A stretch of 64,000 nucleotides of DNA from Phyllobates terribilis (GCF_046119375.1 NW_027362767.1:256432001-256496000), one strand, 5' to 3'; shown: positions 51,895-62,022, counted from the first letter of the stretch. The notes: generated from the sequence alone by a model not told the origin. Made by a program: numbers and translations.

Positions 51895-54800
51895 ATGGGG
51901 CGCTCCTCAAAGGACAAGAGGGACATTTACTACCGGCTGGCCAAGGAGGAAGGCTGGAGAGCGCGCAGTGCCTTCAAGCTTCTGCAGCTGGATGAGGAGT
52001 ATCGGCTCTTCCAAGGTATCCGGCGCCCTCATCGCGTCTCCCTGCCTCGCCCTCATCGCGTCTCCCTGCCTCGCCCTCATCGCGTCTCCCTGCCTCGCCC
52101 TCATCGCGTCTCCCTGCCTCGCCCTCATCGCGTCTCCCGGCATCCACGTACCTCTTGATTAGTCTGCCTGGAGTGATGTCATCGTTGTGATGTAACACAC
52201 AAAAAGCAAGGCTGCCCAATCAGAAGAGGAGCCAGGGATGTCGGTAGGTACTAACAGGTTCTCAGGGCTCCTGTTCAACAGCCACAAAAAACTCACTTGG
52301 CCGCTGGACCTGGTCTTGCAAAACTTTTCAGTCTCTTCTCAAAAGTCCTCTTAGTGCTGGAATCAAGGGCGGAGTACAGACTATATAAAAAGCTGTAGTC
52401 TTTCTACTAAATCCGTGCTCTGCTCTGTGCGCTCTCGGGTTGATGCTGTGCGCTTCTGAGAATTCTTTTGAGCAATCGGTGGGGGTCTAAGGGACAATAT
52501 GCAAAGTATTAAAGGGCCTACAACTTATTAAAAAAACAAAAACAGAAGTATAGTGACTCATTGGCTGTGTGCATATGCTGCGTTTTTTTCAATGCAGATT
52601 GGTCACAAAACCTGAAAAATTTCCTGATGCCATCAAAGTGAATGAGAATCCTAAAGACTCATGCACACGTTGCTTATTTGTGACCTGCAGATTTAGCTCT
52701 GCCATATGTCAATGCTTTCAGCTTTTTTGCTGCAGATTTCACCCATGCTAATGAGTGGGGAAAAATCTGCAACAAAAATGCAGCAAGAACGCACGTTTTT
52801 GCCGCTGCTTTTTTCCTGCCAAGAGAAGCAGAAATTTCTGCACCAAATACTTAGTGTGCACATACCCTTGAACAGATAAGACTTAGTGCCCACGAAGCAG
52901 AAATGCTCCGGATGTTTTCTGCATCTCCCTGGCAGGAAAAACGCATGCGGATTGTACATGCGGATTGTACATGCGTTTTTCCTGCCAGGCAGAAGCGTTT
53001 GTGAAGCGTTTTTGCATGCATTTCCTCATGCGGGTTATGAAGGGATTTTAGAATCACTTGGAAAAGTGCTTGACAACTTGGTCACACTATAAATCCATAC
53101 CGGTTGCATGGATTTATATAGTGTGACCAAGTTAATAGTTAAAAAAAGAATAAAAATGGTAAAAAAAAAAAACATTATACTCACCTTCTGATGGCCTCTG
53201 GTCTTCTCTCCGGTGCGTCCGGTGTCTTGGACAGCTCGCGGTGGTGTAAAAGGACCTTCGCAAAAATAATGGACATGCTGCTTATTTTTCCGCAATGATA
53301 ATCCGCAGCGGAAATTTCCGCAGCATGTGCACAGCACATGGGGATTATCATTGGGGACCATGGGGCACGTATTACCAAGCTTTTACCAAGTTTTTTAAGC
53401 GTTTTCGCTGCGGAAATTCCACTGCAAAAAACGCTTGAAAAACGCATAGTGGGCACGCAGCCTAAAACTTGAGCTCTTGAATTTAGCTGAGCAGAGTCTT
53501 GTGTTTCTTCCCCAGGCGTACAAAGAGCGGTGGACCTGTGTGCGGCCCCCGGGAGCTGGAGCCAGGTTCTTAGCAGAAAGCTCAGGTGAATGGTGTTTTC
53601 TGTGCCAAATCTGAAGCCTCATGCGGGGTGTAGGATCTGCAGCACATAATCAGTGTCTTCACTATGTCTCCTCAGGTCCAGCAATGAGACTACTGAGGTG
53701 AAGATTGTAGCAGTGGATCTTCAGGCGATGGCTCCTCTACCCGGAGTCATCCAGATACAAGGAGATATTACCAAGGTTTGGAAGAAACCTTCACAGTCTT
53801 CTACTGAATTTGTCAGTCTGGATAGGAATTGTCATTTGATCTCGTTTCCTATTTTTAGGTCTCCACAGCTCATGAAATCATCCGACATTTTGAGGGGCAG
53901 CCTGCGGATCTTGTGGTGTGTGACGGGGCTCCTGATGGTAATATCGATATCTCTCTTATGTTCCCTGGTTTTGTTAGGATGTTGTCATTTTATGTAATGT
54001 CACTTTTTCTGGCTTGTAGTTACTGGACTGCATGACATTGATGAGTATATTCAGGCTCAGCTTCTACTGGCGGTGAGTGTCCTTCCAGAAGCGGGACCCC
54101 GTACATTGTGAGAGAAGATGGGTACTTAGTCACATTTCTACACCGCTACAACAGCATAAAATCTGTGATGGATGTAGGGAAAATATTAGCACTGCACCTA
54201 TGGAAAACCATATGGTGATAGAAGGATTTTGTTGTGCATCTGTCCATTACAATTTCCTCAAGCATTGTTACCCAGCTTTTCCAGAATCCTGAGTGACACA
54301 TCTGCCTAGTGTACAGAATGATAGGTGTATTATGGTTTCTGTTCACAAGCTGTAGTAATGCTGTATCTGATTTCCTTGTAGGCTTTAAACATCACAACTC
54401 ATGTGCTGAGAGCAGGGGGCACATTTGTGGCTAAGGTGGGTGACTTGTTGATTGCCATCTCTCTTCCTTTCCTGGCCATATGTCCTGAAGATGAGAACAT
54501 TTCTAATTTAAAATCCCTTATTTTTAGATTTTTCGTGGAAAAGATGTCACACTCCTGTATTCCCAGCTCAAGATCTTTTTCAGAGAAGTCACATGTGCCA
54601 AGCCTCGGAGCAGCCGGAACTCCAGTATAGGTAAAGCAAGTGTACAGAAATCCTAGAACCTCAGAATGGGCTTAACGAGATCACCCCCAAATGCAATAAT
54701 TCCTCCTTCATAGTATATCTGATGGGGGAAGCTCAGAGCTGACAAATGGCATCATTCCCTAAATCAGGATCAACACTCCAGCTGCATAAAACTACAAATC

Positions 54801-57800
54801 CCAGCATTTTGTGACAGGCACAGACTAGCAGACTGCTGTCATGGCATTGTGAGCCCATAGCTTCACAGCAGCTGTAGGTTGCTGACCCTGCCGTAAATCT
54901 ATTGTATCTGGTACAGTGCAGATTGCAGCATTAAAAGGGTTGTCCGCTATTAGGAAAACCCCTTCCCGATCTGAATGTTTGCCCCCTGTGAAAATAAATA
55001 CACCTATACTTACGTCCCGTGCCGGTGCCGTTCCAGTGGTGTTGGCACTCACGTCCCCGTGGATCACGTGCTTTTGTTATGACACGTGAGCCAGGTGCCC
55101 AATCAGCGCTGGTGTCACTATCCACGCCTTCAGACATATACATAATCAAGAGGGCGACCAACCTTAGGTAGCATGAATAATCCAAAACGTTGTCACTGGA
55201 GGCAACACCCAAACTATAAATACCACCAAGAAGAAGCAATAGGTGCTTTTTGCCACTAAAATAAATCTTTATTAAGTATTGCAAAAATGAAAAACAATCC
55301 TACAGAGTATAGCAATGGAGGACCACAAAAATTAAGAGCCCACTGCAAAATTGTCATTTTCTCTGATTTTTCTCTTTCTAGGTATATTTTTTTTAGTAAA
55401 ATGTACATTGTTGTTTTATTCTATAAACTACTGACAACATGTCTCTGAAATTCAAAGCTAAGAATGTTGTATTTATTTGCAGCAAATGAGAAATCATCAA
55501 AATAATAAAAAAGAATCAGAGAAACAGTGCTTTCAGACTTCAAATAATGCAAATAAAACAAGTTCTTATTCTTTTAGAAACAACAATACTCATGTTTTAA
55601 CTGAGGAAGAGTTCAGAAATCAATATTTGGTGGAATAACCATGATTTTTAATCCCAGTTTTCATGCATCTTGGCTGCTTTCTACCAGTCTTTCTCTCTGC
55701 TTTTGGGTGACTTTATTCTGCTCCTGGCACAATAATGTAAGCAGTTCTTCTTTGCTTGATGGCTTGTGACTATCCATCTTCCTCTCGATTACATTCCAGA
55801 GGTTTTCAATGGGATTCAGGTCTGGAGATTGGACTGGCCATGACAGGGTCTTGATGTGGTGCTTCTTCATCCACACATTGATTGACCTAGCTGTGTGGCA
55901 TGGGGCATTGTCCTGCTGGAAAAAACAGTCCTCAGAGTTGGGGAACATTGCCTGAGCAGAAGGAAGTGTTTTTCAAGCATAACCTTGTATGTGGCTTGAT
56001 TCATACGTCCTTCGAAAAGATTAACCTGCCCAATTCCAGCCTTGCTGAAGCATCCCCAGATCATTACCGATCCTCCACCAAATTTCACAGTGGGTGCAAG
56101 ACACTGGGGCTTGTATGCCTCTCCAGGTCTCCGTATAACCATTAGACGATCAGATGTTGGGCAAAGCTGAAAATTAGACTCATCAGAGAAGATTACCTTA
56201 CTCCAGTCCTCTATGGGCCAATCCTTATGGTCTTTGGCAAACTTCAGCCTGGCTCTCCATTGCTTCTCATTGATGAAAGGCTTTTTTCTAGCTTTACATG
56301 ACTTGAGGCCTCCAGGAACCTGGTACCAACTGTTCTTGCCGTGCTCTTCACCCCAGCTGCCATTTGCCGTTCCTTTTGTAGGTCACTTGATGTCATCCTA
56401 CGGTTACTGAGTGCCATTCAAATAAGATGACGATCATCCCAGTCAGTGGAGAGTCGCTTTCGCCCTCTGCCGGTCTGTAGCTTTGTTGTCCCCAATGTCT
56501 GCTGCTTGACCTTGTTGTAATAGACTGCCATCCTCGAAATTTTAAGAATGGAGGCAACATGACGCTCACTGTATCCCTCTGCTAGTAAAGCCAGAATTGA
56601 GCCCTTCTTTTCCTCACTCAAGACTTTTCTTTTCAACTCCTTTGGCATGGTTAAAAGTTATTTTTTCATTCAAGTTACTTTTTTGCTATTCCTAGTCCTA
56701 GCACTTGTTTTGCCATCCAGCTTGTCCTATTGCAAGAGGATTGTGAAGACCACAGCAGTGTTTTTTTATACTTTCCCTCATTACATAAGATTTGGTTCAG
56801 GTGATCACCTAATCAGAAGCACATTCAGTAGAATGAGGTGGACTTTGGTTGGAATTCAACTGACACTGGAATGGAATGGCTGTCAGAGATGTAGAGATGG
56901 GGATTTTTAGAAATAGACAGCCCAGGAATTTACAGGAACAGGATGCTTTTTGCCAAGAAGAATGGGCAGCTTTACCATCTGAGAAAATAAAGAACCTCAT
57001 CCACAACTACCACAAAAGACTTCAAGCTGTCATTGATGTTAGAGGGGGCAATACACGGTATTAAGAACTGGGGTATGTGAACATTCAATCAGGGTCATTT
57101 GGATGTTTTTGGTTGTCATTAAGATTTAAAAAGAGAAAACACAGTAGTTTGACAATAAATGGCTTCACCCATCCAATAACCATGAGTGGAGAAAAAGTTT
57201 TTTTTGTTATTATTCATATTCTCTGAAACAAGGCCAAGAAAGGAAAAATTCTGCCTGGGTATATAAACTTTTGTTTACAACTGTATAATTAATTGCGGTG
57301 CTATAGATCTTATAATTCATTAAAAAAAAAAAAAAAAAAAAAAAAAAAGTTATATATACAGTACAGACCAAAAGTTTGGACACACCTTCTCATTTAAAGA
57401 TTTTTCTGTATTTTCATGACTATGAAAATTGCACATTCACACTGAAGGCATCAAAACTATGAATTAACACATGTGGAATTATATACTTAACAAAAAAGTG
57501 TGAAACAACTGAAAATATGTCTTATATTCTAGGTTCTTCAAAGTAGCCACCTTTTGCTTTGATGACTGCTTTGCACACTCTTGGCATCCTCTTGATGAGC
57601 TTCAAGAGGTAGTCACCGGAAATGGTTTTCACTTCACAGGTGTGTCCTGTCAGGTTTAATAAGTGGGATTTCTTGCCTTATAAATGGGGTTGGGACCATC
57701 AGTTGTGTTGTGCAGAAGTCTGGTGGATACACAGCTGATAGTCCTACTGAATAGACTGTTAGAATTTGTATTATGGCAAGAAAAAAGCAGCTAAGTAAAG

Positions 57801-60800
57801 AAAAATGAGTGGCCATCATTACTTTAAGAAATGAAGGTCAGTCAGTCTGAAAAATTTGGCAAACTTTGAAAGTGTCCTTAAGTGCAGTTGCAAAAACCAT
57901 CAAGCGCTACAAAGAAACTGGCTCACATGAGGACCGCCCCAGGAAAGGAAGACCAAGAGTCACCTCTGCTTCTGCGGATAAGTTTATCCGAGTCACCAGC
58001 CTCAGAAAGCGCAGGTTAACAGCAGCTCAGATTAGAGACCAGGTCAATGCCACACAGAGTTCTAGCAGCAGACACATCTCTACAACAACTGTTAAGAGGA
58101 GACTTTGTGCAGCAGGCCTTCATGGTAAAATAGCTGCTAGGAAACCACTGCTAAGGACAGGCAACAAGCAGAAGAGACTTGTTTGGGCTAAAGAACACAA
58201 GGAATGGACATTAGACCAGTGGAAATCTGTGCTTTGGTCTGATGAGTCCAAATTTGAGATCTTTGGTTCCAACCACCCTGTCTTTGTGCGACGCACAAAA
58301 GGTGAACGGATGGACTCTACATGCCTGATTCCCACCGTGAAGCATGGAGGAGGAGGTGTGATGGTGTGGAGCTGTGTAAGGCCTATTTGACCAAGAAGGA
58401 GAGTGATGGGGTGCTACGCCAGATGGCCTGGCCTCCACAGTCACCAGACCTGAACCCAATCAAGATGGTTTGGGGTGAGCTGGACCGCAGAGTGAAGGCA
58501 AAAGGGCCAACAAGTGCTAAGCATCTCTGGGAACTCCTTCAAGATTGTTGGAAGACCATTTCCGGTGACTACCTCTTGAAGCTCATCAAGAGAATGCCAA
58601 GAGTGTGCAAAGCAGTCATCAAAGCAAAAGGTGGCTACTTTGAAGAACCTAGAATGTAAGACATATTTTCAGTTGTTTCACACTTTTTTGTTAAGTATAT
58701 AATTCCACATGTGTTAATTCATAGTTTTGATGCCTTCAGTGTGAATGTACAATTTTCATAGTCATGAAAATACAGAAAAAGCTTTAAATGAGAAGGTGTG
58801 TCCAAACTTTTGGTCTGTACTGTATATATAAAGTTTGGACACACCTTCTCATTTAAAGATTTTTCTGTATTTTCATGACTATGAAAATTGTACATTCACA
58901 CTGAAGGCATCAAAACTATGAATTAACACATGTGGAATTATATACTTAACAAAAAAGTGTGAAACAACTGAAAATATGTCTTACATTCTAGGTTCTTCAA
59001 AGTAGCCACCTTTTGCTTTGATGACTGCTTTGCACACTCTTGGCATTCTCTTGATGAGCTTCAAGAGGTAGTCACCGGAAATGGTCTTCCAACAATCTTG
59101 AAGGAGCTCCCAGAGATGCTTAGCACTTGTTGGCCCTTTTGCCTTCACTCTGCGGTCCAGCTCACCCCAAACCATCTCGATTGGGTTCAGGTCTGGTGAC
59201 TGTGGAGGCCAGGTCATCTGGCGTAGCACCCCATCACTCTTGCTCTTGGTCAAATAGCCCTTACACAGCCTGGAGGAGTCTTTGGGGTCATTGTCCTGTT
59301 GAAAAATAAATGATGGTCCAACTAAACGCAAACCGGATGGAATAGCATGCCGCTGCAAGATGCCGTGGTAGCCATGCTGGTTCAGTATGCCTTCAATTTT
59401 GAATAACTCCCCAACAGTGTCACCAGCAAAGCACCCCCACACCATCACACCTCCTCCTCCATGCTTCACGGTGGGAACCAGGCATGTAGAGTCCATCCGT
59501 TCACCTTTTCTGCGTCGCAGAAAGACACGGTGGTTGGAACCAAAGATCTCAAATTTGGACTCATCAGACCAAAGCACAGATTTCCACTGGTCTAATGTCC
59601 ATTCCTTGTGTTCTTTAGCCCAAACAAGTCTCTTCTGCTTGTTGCCTGTCCTTAGCAGTGGTTTCCTAGCAGCTATTTTACCATGAAGGCCTGCTGCACA
59701 AAGTCTCCTCTTAACAGTTGTTGAAGAGATGTGTCTGCTGCTAGAACTCTGTGTGGCATTGACCTGGTCTCTAATCTGAGCTGCTGTTAACCTGCGATTT
59801 CTGAGGCTGGTGACTCGGATAAACTTATCCTCAGAAGCAGAGGTGACTCTTGGTCTTCCTTTCCTGGGGCGGTCCTCATGTGAGCCAGTTTCTTTGTAGC
59901 ACTTGATGGTGTTTGCAACTGCACTTGGGGACACTTTCAAAGTTTTCCCAATTTTTCGGACTGACTGACCTTCATTTCTTAAAGTAATGATGGCCACTCG
60001 TTTTTCTTTACTTAGCTGTTTTTTTCTTGCCATAATACAAATTCTAACAGTCTATTCAGTAGGACTATCAGCTGTGTATACACCAGACTTCTGCACAACA
60101 CAACTGATGGTCCCAACCCCATTTATAAGGCAAGAAATCCCACTTATTAAACCTGACAGGGCACACCTGTGAAGTGAAAACCATTTCCGGTGACTACCTC
60201 TTGAAGCTCATCAAGAGAATGCCAAGAGTGTGCAAAGCAGTCATCAAAGCAAAAGGTGGCTACTTTGAAGAACCTAGAATAAAAGACATATTTTCAGTTG
60301 TTTCACACTTTTTTGTTAAGTATATAATTCCACATGTGTTAATTCATAGTTTTGAGGCCTTCAGTGTGAATGCACAATTTTCATAGTCATGAAAATACAG
60401 AAAAATCTTTAAATGAGAAGGTGTGTCCAAACTTTTGTATATATATATATCTCTATCTATCTCTATCATGGTTGTCAGCAAACAAAAAAAATCCTGATAA
60501 TTAAATGCATATATGGCAAAATATAAATATTAACTTAATATTGCCCTATATGGTTGACATTAACCATAAAAAATGTCAGTGTCTGTAGATACTACTAAAG
60601 AGAGAGCTTCATAGACTCAAAAGCCCAAGTGGGTACACATATATAGTATATAATGTTTAAACTCTTATCGAGAATCTCCTATAGAATAATGCATCCCAAA
60701 TAAAGGAGAAGTAGCTACAGGGCAACTTACATGTCCAAGGTAATATGCCCCCGATGAAGCAAGAGCAAAACTTGCATTGGGGCACTTAGCACCACATCCG

Positions 60801-62022
60801 TCATTAACCCACTTGAACATGTAAGTTACATTTCTTATGGTTAATGTCAACCATATAGGTCAATATTCCGATAATTAAATGCATATATGGCACAATATAA
60901 ACATCATATATATGACTACTATGTCAAGAAGTGTGATACTCATGACGTGGTGATTTGTGGTCCTCCATTGCTATACTCTGTAGGATTGTTTTTAATTTTT
61001 GCAATACTTAATATTTATTTTAGTGGCAATAAGCACCTATTTCTTCTTCTTGGTGGTATGTATAATCAAGCGCTCACTTATTGATTACTAATAGGTCCAT
61101 AGGCGGGACAGTGACGCCAGCGCTGATTGGGCGCAGCAGGGCTCACATGTCATAACAATCACACGTGAGTCCCGGGAACGTAAGTGCCGACACCGCTGGA
61201 ACGGCGCCGGCATGGGAGGTGAGTATACGTGTTTCTATTTTCACAGGAGGGAAACCTTCAGATCGAGAAGGGGTTTTTCTAAAAGTGGACAACCCTTTTA
61301 AATATAGATAATCTCATTATATAGAAGCGGCAATATTGGGTGGTCTCGTGCCAGGCCTTCCCACTTACACGCCTATATCCTAGGAGACTTATGAAGCAGA
61401 CAGTATGGTTATTTCACTGCATGTTAGTAATTATTTTTTCTCCTGTACAGAGGCGTTTGTTGTATGTCAGGGATACAGCCCGCCAGAGGGATATGTACCC
61501 AACATGTCAAATCCCCTGCTGGACCACTGCTATAGTGAGTGCTGGATACACAGATGTCTGGTTTTATGGACCTTGATTTAGAAACGTGAGATTGAATAAT
61601 TAATATTTTTTACCTCTTTTTAGATGTGGACTTTAACCAGCTTGAGGGTCCAAACCGTGTGATAGTTCCATTCCTGGCCTGTGGAGACTTGAGTGCCTAC
61701 GACTCCGACAAGACGTACCCTCTACAGGTAAGGGGGCTGAACCCCAGGAGGCCTTGCTGTACATAGAGGCATCGGGACTAAATGCTTCTGGTGTTTTTCC
61801 CTACAGTTGGAAAATGGTAAAGAATACAGCTACATGCCCCCAAATCAGCCCCCTATTCGTCCGCCCTATCAGGAGGCCTGCTTTTTAAAGAAGAACAATC
61901 TCCTAGCCAAAGAAATGCCACCTTCACCTGTGAACATCCCTTCAACCACGACAAACAGTGAAGATGAAGCAACCAGTGTTTGTGAGGGGGCCGCTATCCA
62001 GAAACTATCCATTTCCTCTTGA
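51895..62022 (+). CDS. FTSJ1: tRNA (cytidine32/guanosine34-2'-O)-methyltransferase (327 aa)
   Basis: Exons 51895-52015, 53516-53585, 53676-53775, 53859-53937, 54020-54072, 54382-54435, 54528-54630, 61451-61534, 61624-61727, 61807-62022; total 984 nt. Motifs: [26 protein letters not shown] tetrad present. Confidence 0.97.
52024..52138. repeat. 24-bp CpG-rich tandem repeat (~4.8 copies)
   Basis: CGCCCTCATCGCGTCTCCCTGCCT, starting 8 nt after the donor. Confidence 0.95.
52563..52867. mobile_element. MITE (GTGTGCACATACCC family)
   Basis: GGCTGTGTGCATATG...GTGTGCACATACCC termini. Confidence 0.65.
52880..53462. mobile_element. Harbinger-like element, inverted and deleted copy of 21908-22802
   Basis: TAA TSD on both sides; shared sequence blocks. 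Confidence 0.85.
55328..56880 (-). mobile_element. Degenerate Tc1 DD34E transposon
   Basis: N-terminal HTH ORF 56418-56648; GGSVMIWGC; QQDNAPCH-34aa-E ([12 protein letters not shown]); frameshifted; termini incomplete. Confidence 0.85.
56881..57283 (+). mobile_element. 3' fragment of a second Tc1-like element with its right TIR
   Basis: ...[15 protein letters not shown]; ends AAACTTTTGTTTACAACTG|TA. Confidence 0.8.
57359..58822 (+). mobile_element. DD38E (Intruder-type) Tc1-family transposon, copy A: defective ORF, intact ~272-bp TIRs
   Basis: TA|CAGTACAGACCAAAAG...CTTTTGGTCTGTACTG|TA; premature stop, frameshift, net 166-bp deletion, catalytic E changed to K. Confidence 0.95.
58830..60437 (-). 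mobile_element. DD38E transposon, copy B: intact ORF, outer 10-12 bp of both TIRs missing
   Basis: Inverted relative to copy A; both ends run directly into (TA)n. Confidence 0.95.
58981..60033 (-). CDS. DD38E transposase (350 aa)
   Basis: HTH region, GRPR linker, [14 protein letters not shown]-38 residues-E (SPDLNPIE). Confidence 0.93.
   Translation of the reverse strand: MARKKQLSKEKRVAIITLRNEGQSVRKIGKTLKVSPSAVANTIKCYKETGSHEDRPRKGRPRVTSASEDKFIRVTSLRNRRLTAAQIRDQVNATQSSSSRHISSTTVKRRLCAAGLHGKIAARKPLLRTGNKQKRLVWAKEHKEWTLDQWKSVLWSDESKFEIFGSNHRVFLRRRKGERMDSTCLVPTVKHGGGGVMVWGCFAGDTVGELFKIEGILNQHGYHGILQRHAIPSGLRLVGPSFIFQQDNDPKDSSRLCKGYLTKSKSDGVLRQMTWPPQSPDLNPIEMVWGELDRRVKAKGPTSAKHLWELLQDCWKTISGDYLLKLIKRMPRVCKAVIKAKGGYFEEPRM

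What the first reader, a model, noticed from the sequence alone, without database searches (positions are those of the whole stretch)
57359..60437. Tail-to-tail DD38E pair forms a ~1.4-kb hairpin inside a housekeeping pre-mRNA: a possible silencing trap
Seen: copy A (+) and copy B (-) are inverted and separated only by TATATATA. They are roughly 95% identical by eye, with a 166-nt bulge, and lie in FTSJ1 intron 7. Established: an inverted duplication read through from a host promoter (maize Mu killer) produces hairpin siRNAs that silence the family in trans; long dsRNA is also an ADAR substrate. Inference: FTSJ1 transcription could yield endo-siRNA/piRNA against this recently active family. 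The DNA palindrome should also be fragile.
Basis: partly seen in the sequence, partly recalled or inferred. Interest (0 to 1): 0.75.

Follow-up and report, generated by a model that had tools for sequence, protein, structure and literature searches.

The report
Inverted transposon pair in FTSJ1 intron
Two young copies of one jumping gene sit back to back in an intron of the housekeeping gene FTSJ1, so the intron RNA could fold into a 1.4-kb double-stranded hairpin, but nothing tested here shows that the hairpin silences anything.

Summary
Copy A (57359-58822, +) and copy B (58831-60437, -) are tail-to-tail Tc1-type transposons of the DD38E (Intruder) family, separated by TATATATA. They are 97.8% identical, not about 95%, and A carries a 166-bp deletion. 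A has intact tips but a dead gene. B has an intact 350-aa transposase gene, but both its tips are clipped by 10 and 12 nt.

The pair lies in the 6.8-kb GT-AG intron between FTSJ1 coding exons 7 and 8, and FTSJ1 is on the + strand. In silico the intron RNA folds into a 1430-bp interrupted duplex (-2778 kcal/mol) with a 19-nt loop.

The symmetry stops exactly at the element ends and the site is a (TA)n tract. The simplest origin is therefore two insertions into a Tc1 hotspot. It is not a segmental duplication or a fold-back assembly artefact.

By established vertebrate biology, ADAR editing and decay with the intron is the likeliest fate, with at most low-level small RNAs. The DNA meets the published criteria for an at-risk quasi-palindrome.

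Unchecked scan notes list similar inverted pairs elsewhere in this genome. This is an ordinary kind of locus, unusually clean, with a low-probability interesting reading.

The parts
57351..57358 (.). (TA)4 left flank of copy A; part of the (TA)n target tract. An A30 run lies just upstream.
   Evidence: sequence
57359..58822 (+). Copy A: a 1464-bp DD38E/Intruder element in the sense orientation to FTSJ1. Its tips are canonical (CAGTACAGACC... / ...GGTCTGTACTG) and flanked by TA. The transposase gene is dead.
57806..57808 (+). Premature stop in A at codon 12 (TGA where B has CGA; a CpG-to-TpG change).
58369..58370 (+). Junction of the 166-bp internal deletion in A. The deletion removes the second catalytic aspartate.
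57359..57630 (+). Left terminal inverted repeat of A, about 262-272 nt.
   Evidence: I3, D2
58551..58822 (+). Right terminal inverted repeat of A. It overlaps the last 36 codons of the transposase frame.
58811..58829 (.). The 19-nt unpaired centre (loop) of the quasi-palindrome: A's last 12 nt, which have no partner in B, plus TATATAT.
58831..60437 (-). Copy B: a 1607-bp DD38E/Intruder element antisense to FTSJ1. The inner tip lacks 12 nt and the outer tip lacks 10 nt.
58981..60033 (-). Intact 350-aa transposase ORF of B, with HTH_Tnp_Tc3_2, HTH_SB and DDE_3 matches and D157/D247/E286.
59270..59435 (-). B-only 166-nt segment. It would be a single-stranded bulge in the hairpin.
60438..60450 (.). 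(TA)n right flank of copy B.
54528..54630 (+). FTSJ1 coding exon 7 (FtsJ profile positions 139-171). The donor GT is at 54631.
61451..61533 (+). FTSJ1 coding exon 8 (…EAFVVCQGY…). The acceptor AG is at 61449-61450.

Best explanation
This is a 3.08-kb quasi-palindrome made of two separate, young copies of one DD38E (Intruder-type) Tc1 transposon. They are inserted tail to tail in a (TA)n microsatellite inside the 6.8-kb intron between FTSJ1 coding exons 7 and 8. Copy A is in the sense orientation. It keeps intact ends but has a stop codon and a 166-bp deletion. Copy B is antisense. It keeps an intact transposase gene but has lost 10 and 12 nt from its two tips. The arrangement is most likely a by-product of the Tc1 preference for alternating TA, not a selected device. 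When FTSJ1 is transcribed, the intron RNA can zip from the 19-nt loop into about 1430 bp of duplex, interrupted by 32 mismatches and a 166-nt bulge. In a vertebrate nucleus the expected fate (inferred, not shown) is heavy A-to-I editing by ADAR and decay with the spliced intron, with at most a trickle of Dicer- or PIWI-type small RNAs. As DNA, the inner 440-bp arms with a 19-nt spacer form an at-risk motif for hairpin formation during replication.
For: The family assignment rests on DD38E spacing, a 350-aa transposase, about 262-nt inverted ends and a full length of about 1630 bp. These match the family description in PMC7731502. The canonical tips are confirmed in two relatives, L001 and L002. 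The copies are separate lineages, with 17 A-private and 10 B-private substitutions when polarised on L002. The inverted symmetry ends at the element boundaries: the host flanks share no inverted similarity apart from an unrelated older repeat far away. The target is (TA)n on all three borders, relative L002 also sits in (TA)9, and Sleeping Beauty prefers ATATATAT (PMC8934666). The RNA minimum free energy is -2777.5 kcal/mol with 1430 A:B pairs, against -777 and -762 for A and B folded alone, and perfect helices reach 247 bp. The central DNA strand folds at -549 kcal/mol with z = -75. Editing of paired inverted repeats is the rule in vertebrates (PMC8096273). Risk from a palindrome rises with arm length and similarity and with a short spacer (PMC7999016).
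Against: The assembly at the junctions, transcription through the intron, editing and small RNAs are therefore all unverified. Two insertions within 8 bp of each other are improbable unless the (TA)n tract is a strong hotspot or the family has very many copies, and the copy number was not measured. B's two clipped tips are not explained by simple insertion. Unchecked scan notes report further inverted DD38E and DD35E pairs in this genome, which could point to a recurrent mechanism and not to chance.
Confidence: 0.7

Rival explanations
1. Silencing trap (Mu killer-like). FTSJ1 read-through, or read-through from B's own promoter, makes hairpin RNA. The RNA is diced or fed to PIWI proteins, and the resulting small RNAs silence the whole DD38E family in trans. 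The clipped tips keep the transposase-coding arm anchored in place.
For: The hairpin covers the whole transposase gene except for 166 nt, and perfect helices reach 247 bp. The host is a housekeeping gene and provides the sense strand. Several precedents exist: Mu killer (PMC1563492); a mouse intronic inverted repeat in Anks3 that yields endo-siRNAs (PMC11239679); and 23-29-nt siteRNAs from intronic transposon remnants in Xenopus, 85% of them antisense to the transposon (PMC3875865). The element's 3' end has no AATAAA or ATTAAA, so B's own transcript may run into A.
Against: No small-RNA or methylation data were available. Vertebrate somatic Dicer handles long dsRNA poorly, and natural hairpin siRNAs are scarce (PMC11239679). 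ADAR editing competes with dicing. Introns are short-lived and nuclear. Every copy of the family already carries about 262-nt inverted ends, so the pair adds quantity and not a new kind of trigger. Scan notes (unchecked) say intact copies persist elsewhere in the genome, so the family does not look obviously silenced to extinction. In Xenopus, siteRNA-bearing genes are repressed, which would be costly for FTSJ1.
Confidence: 0.1
2. A single insertion followed by a local inverted duplication of the element. Candidate routes are fold-back priming at the self-complementary (TA)n tract after a break, or aberrant transposition using ends on sister chromatids. The copies would then have diverged by 2.2%.
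For: The two copies are immediate neighbours joined by a self-complementary (TA)4. B's tips are non-canonical, as might be expected of a repair product and not of a clean integration. Scan notes report other inverted and fold-back DD38E structures in this genome (unchecked). Alternative transposition makes such inverted duplications for Ac/Ds in maize (bioRxiv 10.1101/2020.01.07.897926).
Against: Fold-back synthesis would normally also copy host flank in inverted orientation, and none is found. Both copies carry private changes, which fits either model. The model needs B to end within 10 nt of the element boundary by coincidence or by a microhomology join.
Confidence: 0.15
3. Assembly artefact: two different genomic copies of an abundant repeat were wrongly joined at a TA-rich junction, or a fold-back chimeric read was built into the assembly.
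For: The family is repetitive and the junctions lie in low-complexity (TA)n. No reads could be checked.
Against: A fold-back chimera would give identical arms. Here the arms differ by 32 substitutions, a 166-bp indel and different tips. Both outer flanks are unique intron sequence continuous with FTSJ1 exons in the correct order and phase.
Confidence: 0.05

Closest known systems
Intruder (IT, DD38E) family of Tc1/mariner transposons (PMC7731502)
   Same: It shares the DD38E catalytic spacing and TA targets. Full length is about 1630 bp against 1.5-1.7 kb for the family, the inverted ends are about 262 nt against up to 272 nt, and the transposase is 350 aa against 341-379 aa. It is young: the copies differ by 2.2%, and the family is described as a recent invader of ray-finned fish and one anuran.
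   Different: The family description has nothing corresponding to a tail-to-tail pair in which one copy has an intact gene with clipped tips and the other has intact tips with a dead gene. Placement inside the IT clade by a tree was not done here.
Mu killer of maize: an inverted duplication of MuDR read from a flanking promoter (PMC1563492)
   Same: Both are natural inverted duplications of an autonomous DNA transposon's sequence, placed where an outside promoter can transcribe them into a long hairpin.
   Different: Muk acts through plant small-RNA-directed DNA methylation, and its small RNAs and heritable silencing were demonstrated. Here nothing downstream of the DNA structure is shown. The host is a vertebrate and the hairpin is intronic.
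Paired inverted repeats in pre-mRNAs as ADAR substrates (Alu pairs in human; palindromic and paired repeats in zebrafish, PMC8096273)
   Same: Both consist of two oppositely oriented copies of one repeat within one transcription unit, forming intramolecular dsRNA.
   Different: This duplex is far longer and more perfect than a typical Alu pair (about 1430 bp at 97.8% against about 300 bp at 80-90%), and its loop is only 19 nt. Editing was not measured.
Natural hairpin endo-siRNA loci of mouse (Optn 3' inverted repeat, Anks3 intronic inverted repeat; PMC11239679) and Xenopus siteRNAs from intronic transposon remnants (PMC3875865)
   Same: Both involve a genic, in some cases intronic, repeat-derived RNA that gives small RNAs in a vertebrate.
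   Different: Those loci were defined by sequenced small RNAs, and none are available here. siteRNAs are 23-29 nt, are not known to need a hairpin, and go with repression of the host gene.
Alu quasi-palindromes with short spacers as fragile motifs (PMC7999016, PMC8053094)
   Same: Both have long, highly similar arms and a spacer under about 20 nt.
   Different: Fragility was shown in yeast and cultured cells for engineered repeats. Breakage or polymorphism at this locus was not examined.
SOS splicing of DNA transposons from mRNAs, triggered by pairing of inverted ends (PMC12779559)
   Same: Both involve base-pairing of Tc1-type inverted ends within a host transcript.
   Different: SOS splicing was seen for exonic and 3'-UTR insertions but not for intronic Tc1 (Extended Data Fig. 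2 legend). This pair is intronic and is removed by ordinary splicing.

Membership tests
DD38E / Intruder Tc1-mariner transposon | DDE triad with 38 residues between the second D and the E | tested here: met
   D157, D247 and E286 in the 350-aa ORF of B; the D-to-E spacing is 38.
DD38E / Intruder Tc1-mariner transposon | Tc1-type DNA-binding and catalytic domains | tested here: met
   Pfam gives HTH_Tnp_Tc3_2 at 2.9e-12. HTH_SB (33.4 bits) and DDE_3 (27.4 bits, E 3.3e-06) match below their curated cut-offs. A GRPR motif is present in the sequence.
DD38E / Intruder Tc1-mariner transposon | Length 1.5-1.7 kb, terminal inverted repeats up to 272 bp, transposase 341-379 aa (PMC7731502) | tested here: met
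   A plus its deletion comes to 1630 bp. The inverted ends are 260-286 nt by the repeat finder. The ORF is 350 aa.
DD38E / Intruder Tc1-mariner transposon | TA target-site duplication | tested here: inconclusive
   A is flanked by TA on both sides, but the site is a (TA)n tract, so a duplication cannot be told apart from the repeat. B's tips are clipped.
DD38E / Intruder Tc1-mariner transposon | Placement within the IT clade in a transposase tree | not tested
   Only nearest neighbours were seen: unnamed Logan and ENA proteins at 93% and 91%, and named fish and poison-frog proteins at 88-91%.
Mu killer-type trans-silencing locus | Inverted duplication of sequence from an autonomous transposon | tested here: met
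Mu killer-type trans-silencing locus | A hairpin transcript made from an outside promoter | not testable with these tools
   The location in an FTSJ1 intron in the right orientation is shown.
Mu killer-type trans-silencing locus | Hairpin-derived small RNAs and heritable silencing or methylation of active copies | not testable with these tools
   There is no access to small-RNA or methylation data.
ADAR-edited inverted-repeat dsRNA | Long intramolecular duplex within one transcription unit | tested here: met
   The minimum-free-energy fold has 1430 A:B pairs and helices up to 247 bp. Both arms lie in one intron.
ADAR-edited inverted-repeat dsRNA | Clusters of A-to-G mismatches in RNA reads | not testable with these tools
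Fragile long quasi-palindrome | Long, highly similar arms with a short spacer | tested here: met
   The arms are 440 nt at 98% with a 19-nt spacer, extending to 1.4 kb past a bulge. The single strand folds at -549 kcal/mol with z = -75.
Fragile long quasi-palindrome | Observed breakage, rearrangement or presence/absence polymorphism | not testable with these tools
   There are no population or read data. The 12-nt loss at the centre may be a scar, but that is inference only.
SOS-splicing substrate | Transposon with pairing inverted ends located in an exon or 3' UTR of the mRNA | tested here: not met
   The pair is intronic, and the paper reports no SOS splicing from introns.

The most novel reading that the evidence does not exclude
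The locus is a vertebrate counterpart of Mu killer. An immobilised, coding-competent DD38E copy is locked tail to tail with a dead twin inside a constitutively transcribed gene. Its hairpin RNA seeds germline small RNAs that hold a still-active transposon family in check, and the clipped tips of B and the 19-nt asymmetric centre are what let the palindrome persist.
Probability: 0.07. Interest if true: 0.8.

Novelty: new member of a known kind. Interest (0 to 1): 0.3.

Why it matters
How a host first recognises a newly invading DNA transposon is an open question in vertebrates. If the silencing reading were true, this locus would show that recognition in action. A chance inverted pair in a housekeeping intron would be a natural, heritable hairpin trigger, and 32 copy-specific variants plus a 166-nt single-stranded bulge would serve as built-in controls for mapping small RNAs and editing.

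On the reading I favour, it is one more inverted repeat pair of the kind that feeds ADAR in every repeat-rich genome. It would then be useful mainly as an unusually clean test substrate for three things: editing against dicing of a near-perfect 1.4-kb intronic duplex, stability of a long palindrome, and a stationary transposase source beside a mobilisable defective copy.

Tried and rejected
Assembly, transcription, editing and small RNAs remain untested.

2. Exact-protein look-up of B's transposase found nothing on record.

3. Rfam at gathering thresholds over the whole window gave no match, so there is no known miRNA or other RNA family here.

4. Arm-to-arm gene conversion. The innermost 247 bp are identical, but a perfect run that long arises in 7% of random placements of 32 differences. 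I do not claim conversion.

5. Large segmental inverted duplication. Sensitive blastn of the left intron flank against the reverse complement of the right flank finds only an unrelated, older 400-nt repeat far from the pair. Rejected.

6. Fold-back chimeric read artefact. Rejected because the arms differ in 32 substitutions, one indel and their tips.

7. SOS splicing. Considered and rejected, because the paper reports that it does not act on intronic Tc1.

8. Joined FTSJ1 model.

9. Host organism. I did not establish it myself. An unchecked scan note calls this genome the golden poison frog, and one search does list Phyllobates terribilis proteins containing this transposase at 75-89% identity.
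Full report
**What is there**

The window holds a 3079-bp quasi-palindrome at 57359-60437. The repeat finder reports inverted arms 57369-58374/59432-60437 (1006 nt, 98%) and 58371-58810/58830-59269 (440 nt, 98%, 19 nt apart). The sequence read-out and a global alignment give the details.
- Copy A is 57359-58822 on the + strand.
- Copy B is 58831-60437 on the - strand.
- TATATATA (58823-58830) lies between them.
- There are 32 substitutions in 1442 aligned positions, which is 97.8% identity.
- There is a single 166-nt gap in A after 58369.

A repeat of this length and identity cannot arise by chance. A 24-nt probe from the element end finds exactly the four expected ends in the window, with none expected by chance.

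**What the copies are**

B carries an uninterrupted 350-aa ORF at 58981-60033 on the - strand. Pfam finds the Tc1 HTH_Tnp_Tc3_2 domain at 2.9e-12. The Sleeping Beauty HTH and DDE_3 models also match, but below their curated cut-offs. The catalytic residues are D157, D247 and E286, with 38 residues between the second aspartate and the glutamate. That is the DD38E signature of the Intruder (IT) family.

The published family description gives 1.5-1.7 kb, a transposase of 341-379 aa, inverted ends up to 272 bp, TA targets and recent invasions of ray-finned fish and one anuran (PMC7731502). The elements here fit it: about 1630 bp when complete, with inverted ends of about 262 nt that overlap the last 36 codons. 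The closest proteins in the large collection are 93% and 91% identical (unnamed Logan and ENA assemblies). Named fish and poison-frog proteins follow at 88-91%.

A is dead. It has CGA to TGA at codon 12 (57806-57808), and its 166-bp deletion removes D247.

**The tips**

A has the canonical ends, TA-CAGTACAGACC... and ...GGTCTGTACTG-TA. Two independent relatives show the same ends: L002, a public-assembly contig 96.5% identical in DNA, and L001, from Metynnis hypsauchen. B lacks 12 nt at its inner tip and 10 nt at its outer tip.

The copy with a working gene therefore has no cleavage sites, and the copy with cleavage sites has no gene. The scan had already noted this on the same stretch (s1-232584), and I confirm it. 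I cannot explain why one young copy lost both tips. My notebook lists three untested ideas:
- A centre-break scar that turned a spacer-less palindrome into one with a 19-nt asymmetric centre.
- End-joining scars left after abortive transposase cuts.
- Slippage in the (TA)n tracts.

**The host gene**

Six-frame motif searches and stop-to-stop reading frames show FtsJ methyltransferase exons on the + strand. Searched exon by exon, they hit Pfam FtsJ in collinear order: profile positions 1-19, 23-42, 44-77, 81-102 and 139-171.

The first coding exon and an exon downstream of the pair both match best the tRNA (cytidine32/guanosine34-2'-O)-methyltransferase chain 8y2o_B. The E-values are 9e-19 and 7.5e-12, at chain positions 19-59 and 239-268. 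This is FTSJ1/TRM7 and not FTSJ3 or MRM2.

Coding exon 7 ends at 54630 with a GT at 54631. Exon 8 starts at 61451 after an AG. The split codon reads ...[12 protein letters not shown]. The pair therefore lies in a 6820-nt phase-1 intron, 2.7 kb from the donor and 1.0 kb from the acceptor, with A in the sense orientation.

**How it arose**

The inverted symmetry stops exactly at the element boundaries. A sensitive comparison of the left intron flank with the reverse complement of the right flank finds only an unrelated, older repeat of about 400 nt near the two intron ends. That rules out a segmental inverted duplication.

A fold-back chimeric read would give identical arms. These arms differ by 32 substitutions, an indel and their tips. 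With L002 as outgroup, 17 differences are private to A and 10 to B.

All three borders are alternating TA, relative L002 also sits in (TA)9, and Sleeping Beauty prefers ATATATAT (PMC8934666). Two hits in one (TA)n hotspot is therefore the simplest origin. A single insertion followed by an element-limited inverted duplication remains possible, at about 15%. It would need a family tree of genomic copies to exclude.

The innermost 247 bp are identical. This is not significant (P = 0.07 by simulation), so I make no claim of arm-to-arm conversion.

**What the RNA and DNA could do**

Folding 57340-60460 as RNA gives -2777.5 kcal/mol. The fold has 1430 of 1483 pairs between A and B in palindrome register and perfect helices of 247, 195, 137 and 129 bp. 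A and B folded alone give -777 and -762 kcal/mol. Because the loop is only 19 nt, the inner stem can nucleate as soon as B's first bases are made. This point is inference.

The central 899 nt as single-stranded DNA fold at -549 kcal/mol with z = -75. By the published rules, longer and more similar arms with a shorter spacer are more dangerous. Alu pairs with a 12-bp spacer stall forks in eukaryotes and pairs with a 52-bp spacer do not (PMC7999016).

**Does it silence anything?**

I did not seek the same data another way, so there is no evidence on the assembly junctions, intron transcription, A-to-I editing or small RNAs.

From the literature:
- Paired inverted repeats are the main ADAR substrates in vertebrates, fish included (PMC8096273).
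- Natural inverted repeats in mouse genes, one of them intronic (Anks3), yield only low levels of endo-siRNAs, and effective RNAi needs exceptional conditions (PMC11239679).
- Xenopus embryos make 23-29-nt siteRNAs from intronic transposon remnants, mostly antisense to the transposon and associated with repression of the host gene (PMC3875865).
- Mu killer works through a plant pathway (PMC1563492).
- SOS splicing, which senses paired Tc1 ends, does not act on intronic copies (PMC12779559).
- Each single copy of this family already has about 262-nt inverted ends, so any read-through copy makes dsRNA.

I therefore put heavy editing and decay with the intron first. A true trans-silencing role is at about 7-10%.

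One further inference: the element's 3' end has no AATAAA or ATTAAA. On the minus strand the first such signal after B's stop codon lies deep in A, at 57655-57660. A transcript from B's own promoter might also run into A and form the same hairpin without FTSJ1.

**Context from the scan (unchecked AI notes)**

Other windows of this genome are said to hold several intact DD38E copies of 1627-1629 bp, another inverted DD38E pair, a fold-back DD38E element and an inverted DD35E pair in an intron. One follow-up note calls the genome the golden poison frog. That is compatible with the Phyllobates terribilis hits, but I did not establish it myself. If these notes hold, the family is young and abundant, and inverted pairs are a recurring by-product here and not a singular device.

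**Verdict**

It is a new member of a known kind, an inverted transposon pair in an intron. It is notable for its length, its near-perfection and the complementary defects of its two halves.

Noticed in passing
window 54931-55329 and 60954-61301: A second, older inverted repeat of about 400 nt brackets the same FTSJ1 intron. It is 74% identical overall, with blocks at 84-93%. One copy starts 300 nt after the donor and the other ends 150 nt before the acceptor. There is no other copy in the window. Pairing could bring the splice sites together and would be a further dsRNA source.
   Followed up: partly
window 58831-60437: Copy B has lost 12 nt at its inner tip and 10 nt at its outer tip but keeps an intact transposase ORF, while its neighbour A has intact tips and a dead ORF. 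The two small terminal deletions on one young copy are unexplained.
   Followed up: partly
window 60480-60910: A MITE-like unit with 48-nt inverted ends (60529-60576 / 60828-60875, 90%) and short direct repeats at its borders lies just downstream of copy B.
   Followed up: no
window 55806-55845: A short relic of a different Tc1-like transposase, 73% identical to the DD38E copy over 37-40 nt, lies in the same intron.
   Followed up: no
window about 52018-52160: A tandem repeat of a 24-nt unit starts right at the donor of FTSJ1 coding exon 1. It reads as repeated PRPHRVSL in the exon's frame.
   Followed up: no
window 57322-57348: An uninterrupted run of about 27-30 A abuts the (TA)n target tract. 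It is possibly the tail of a retroposed element upstream.
   Followed up: no
protein P0005: A protein named 'transposase, partial [Vibrio parahaemolyticus]' on a 1255-nt contig is 90% identical to this vertebrate Tc1 transposase. This is most likely animal DNA carried into a bacterial assembly.
   Followed up: no
L002:1340-1400: The closest DNA relative found, a public-assembly contig 96.5% identical, also ends in a (TA)9 tract. This fits a strong preference of the family for alternating TA.
   Followed up: partly
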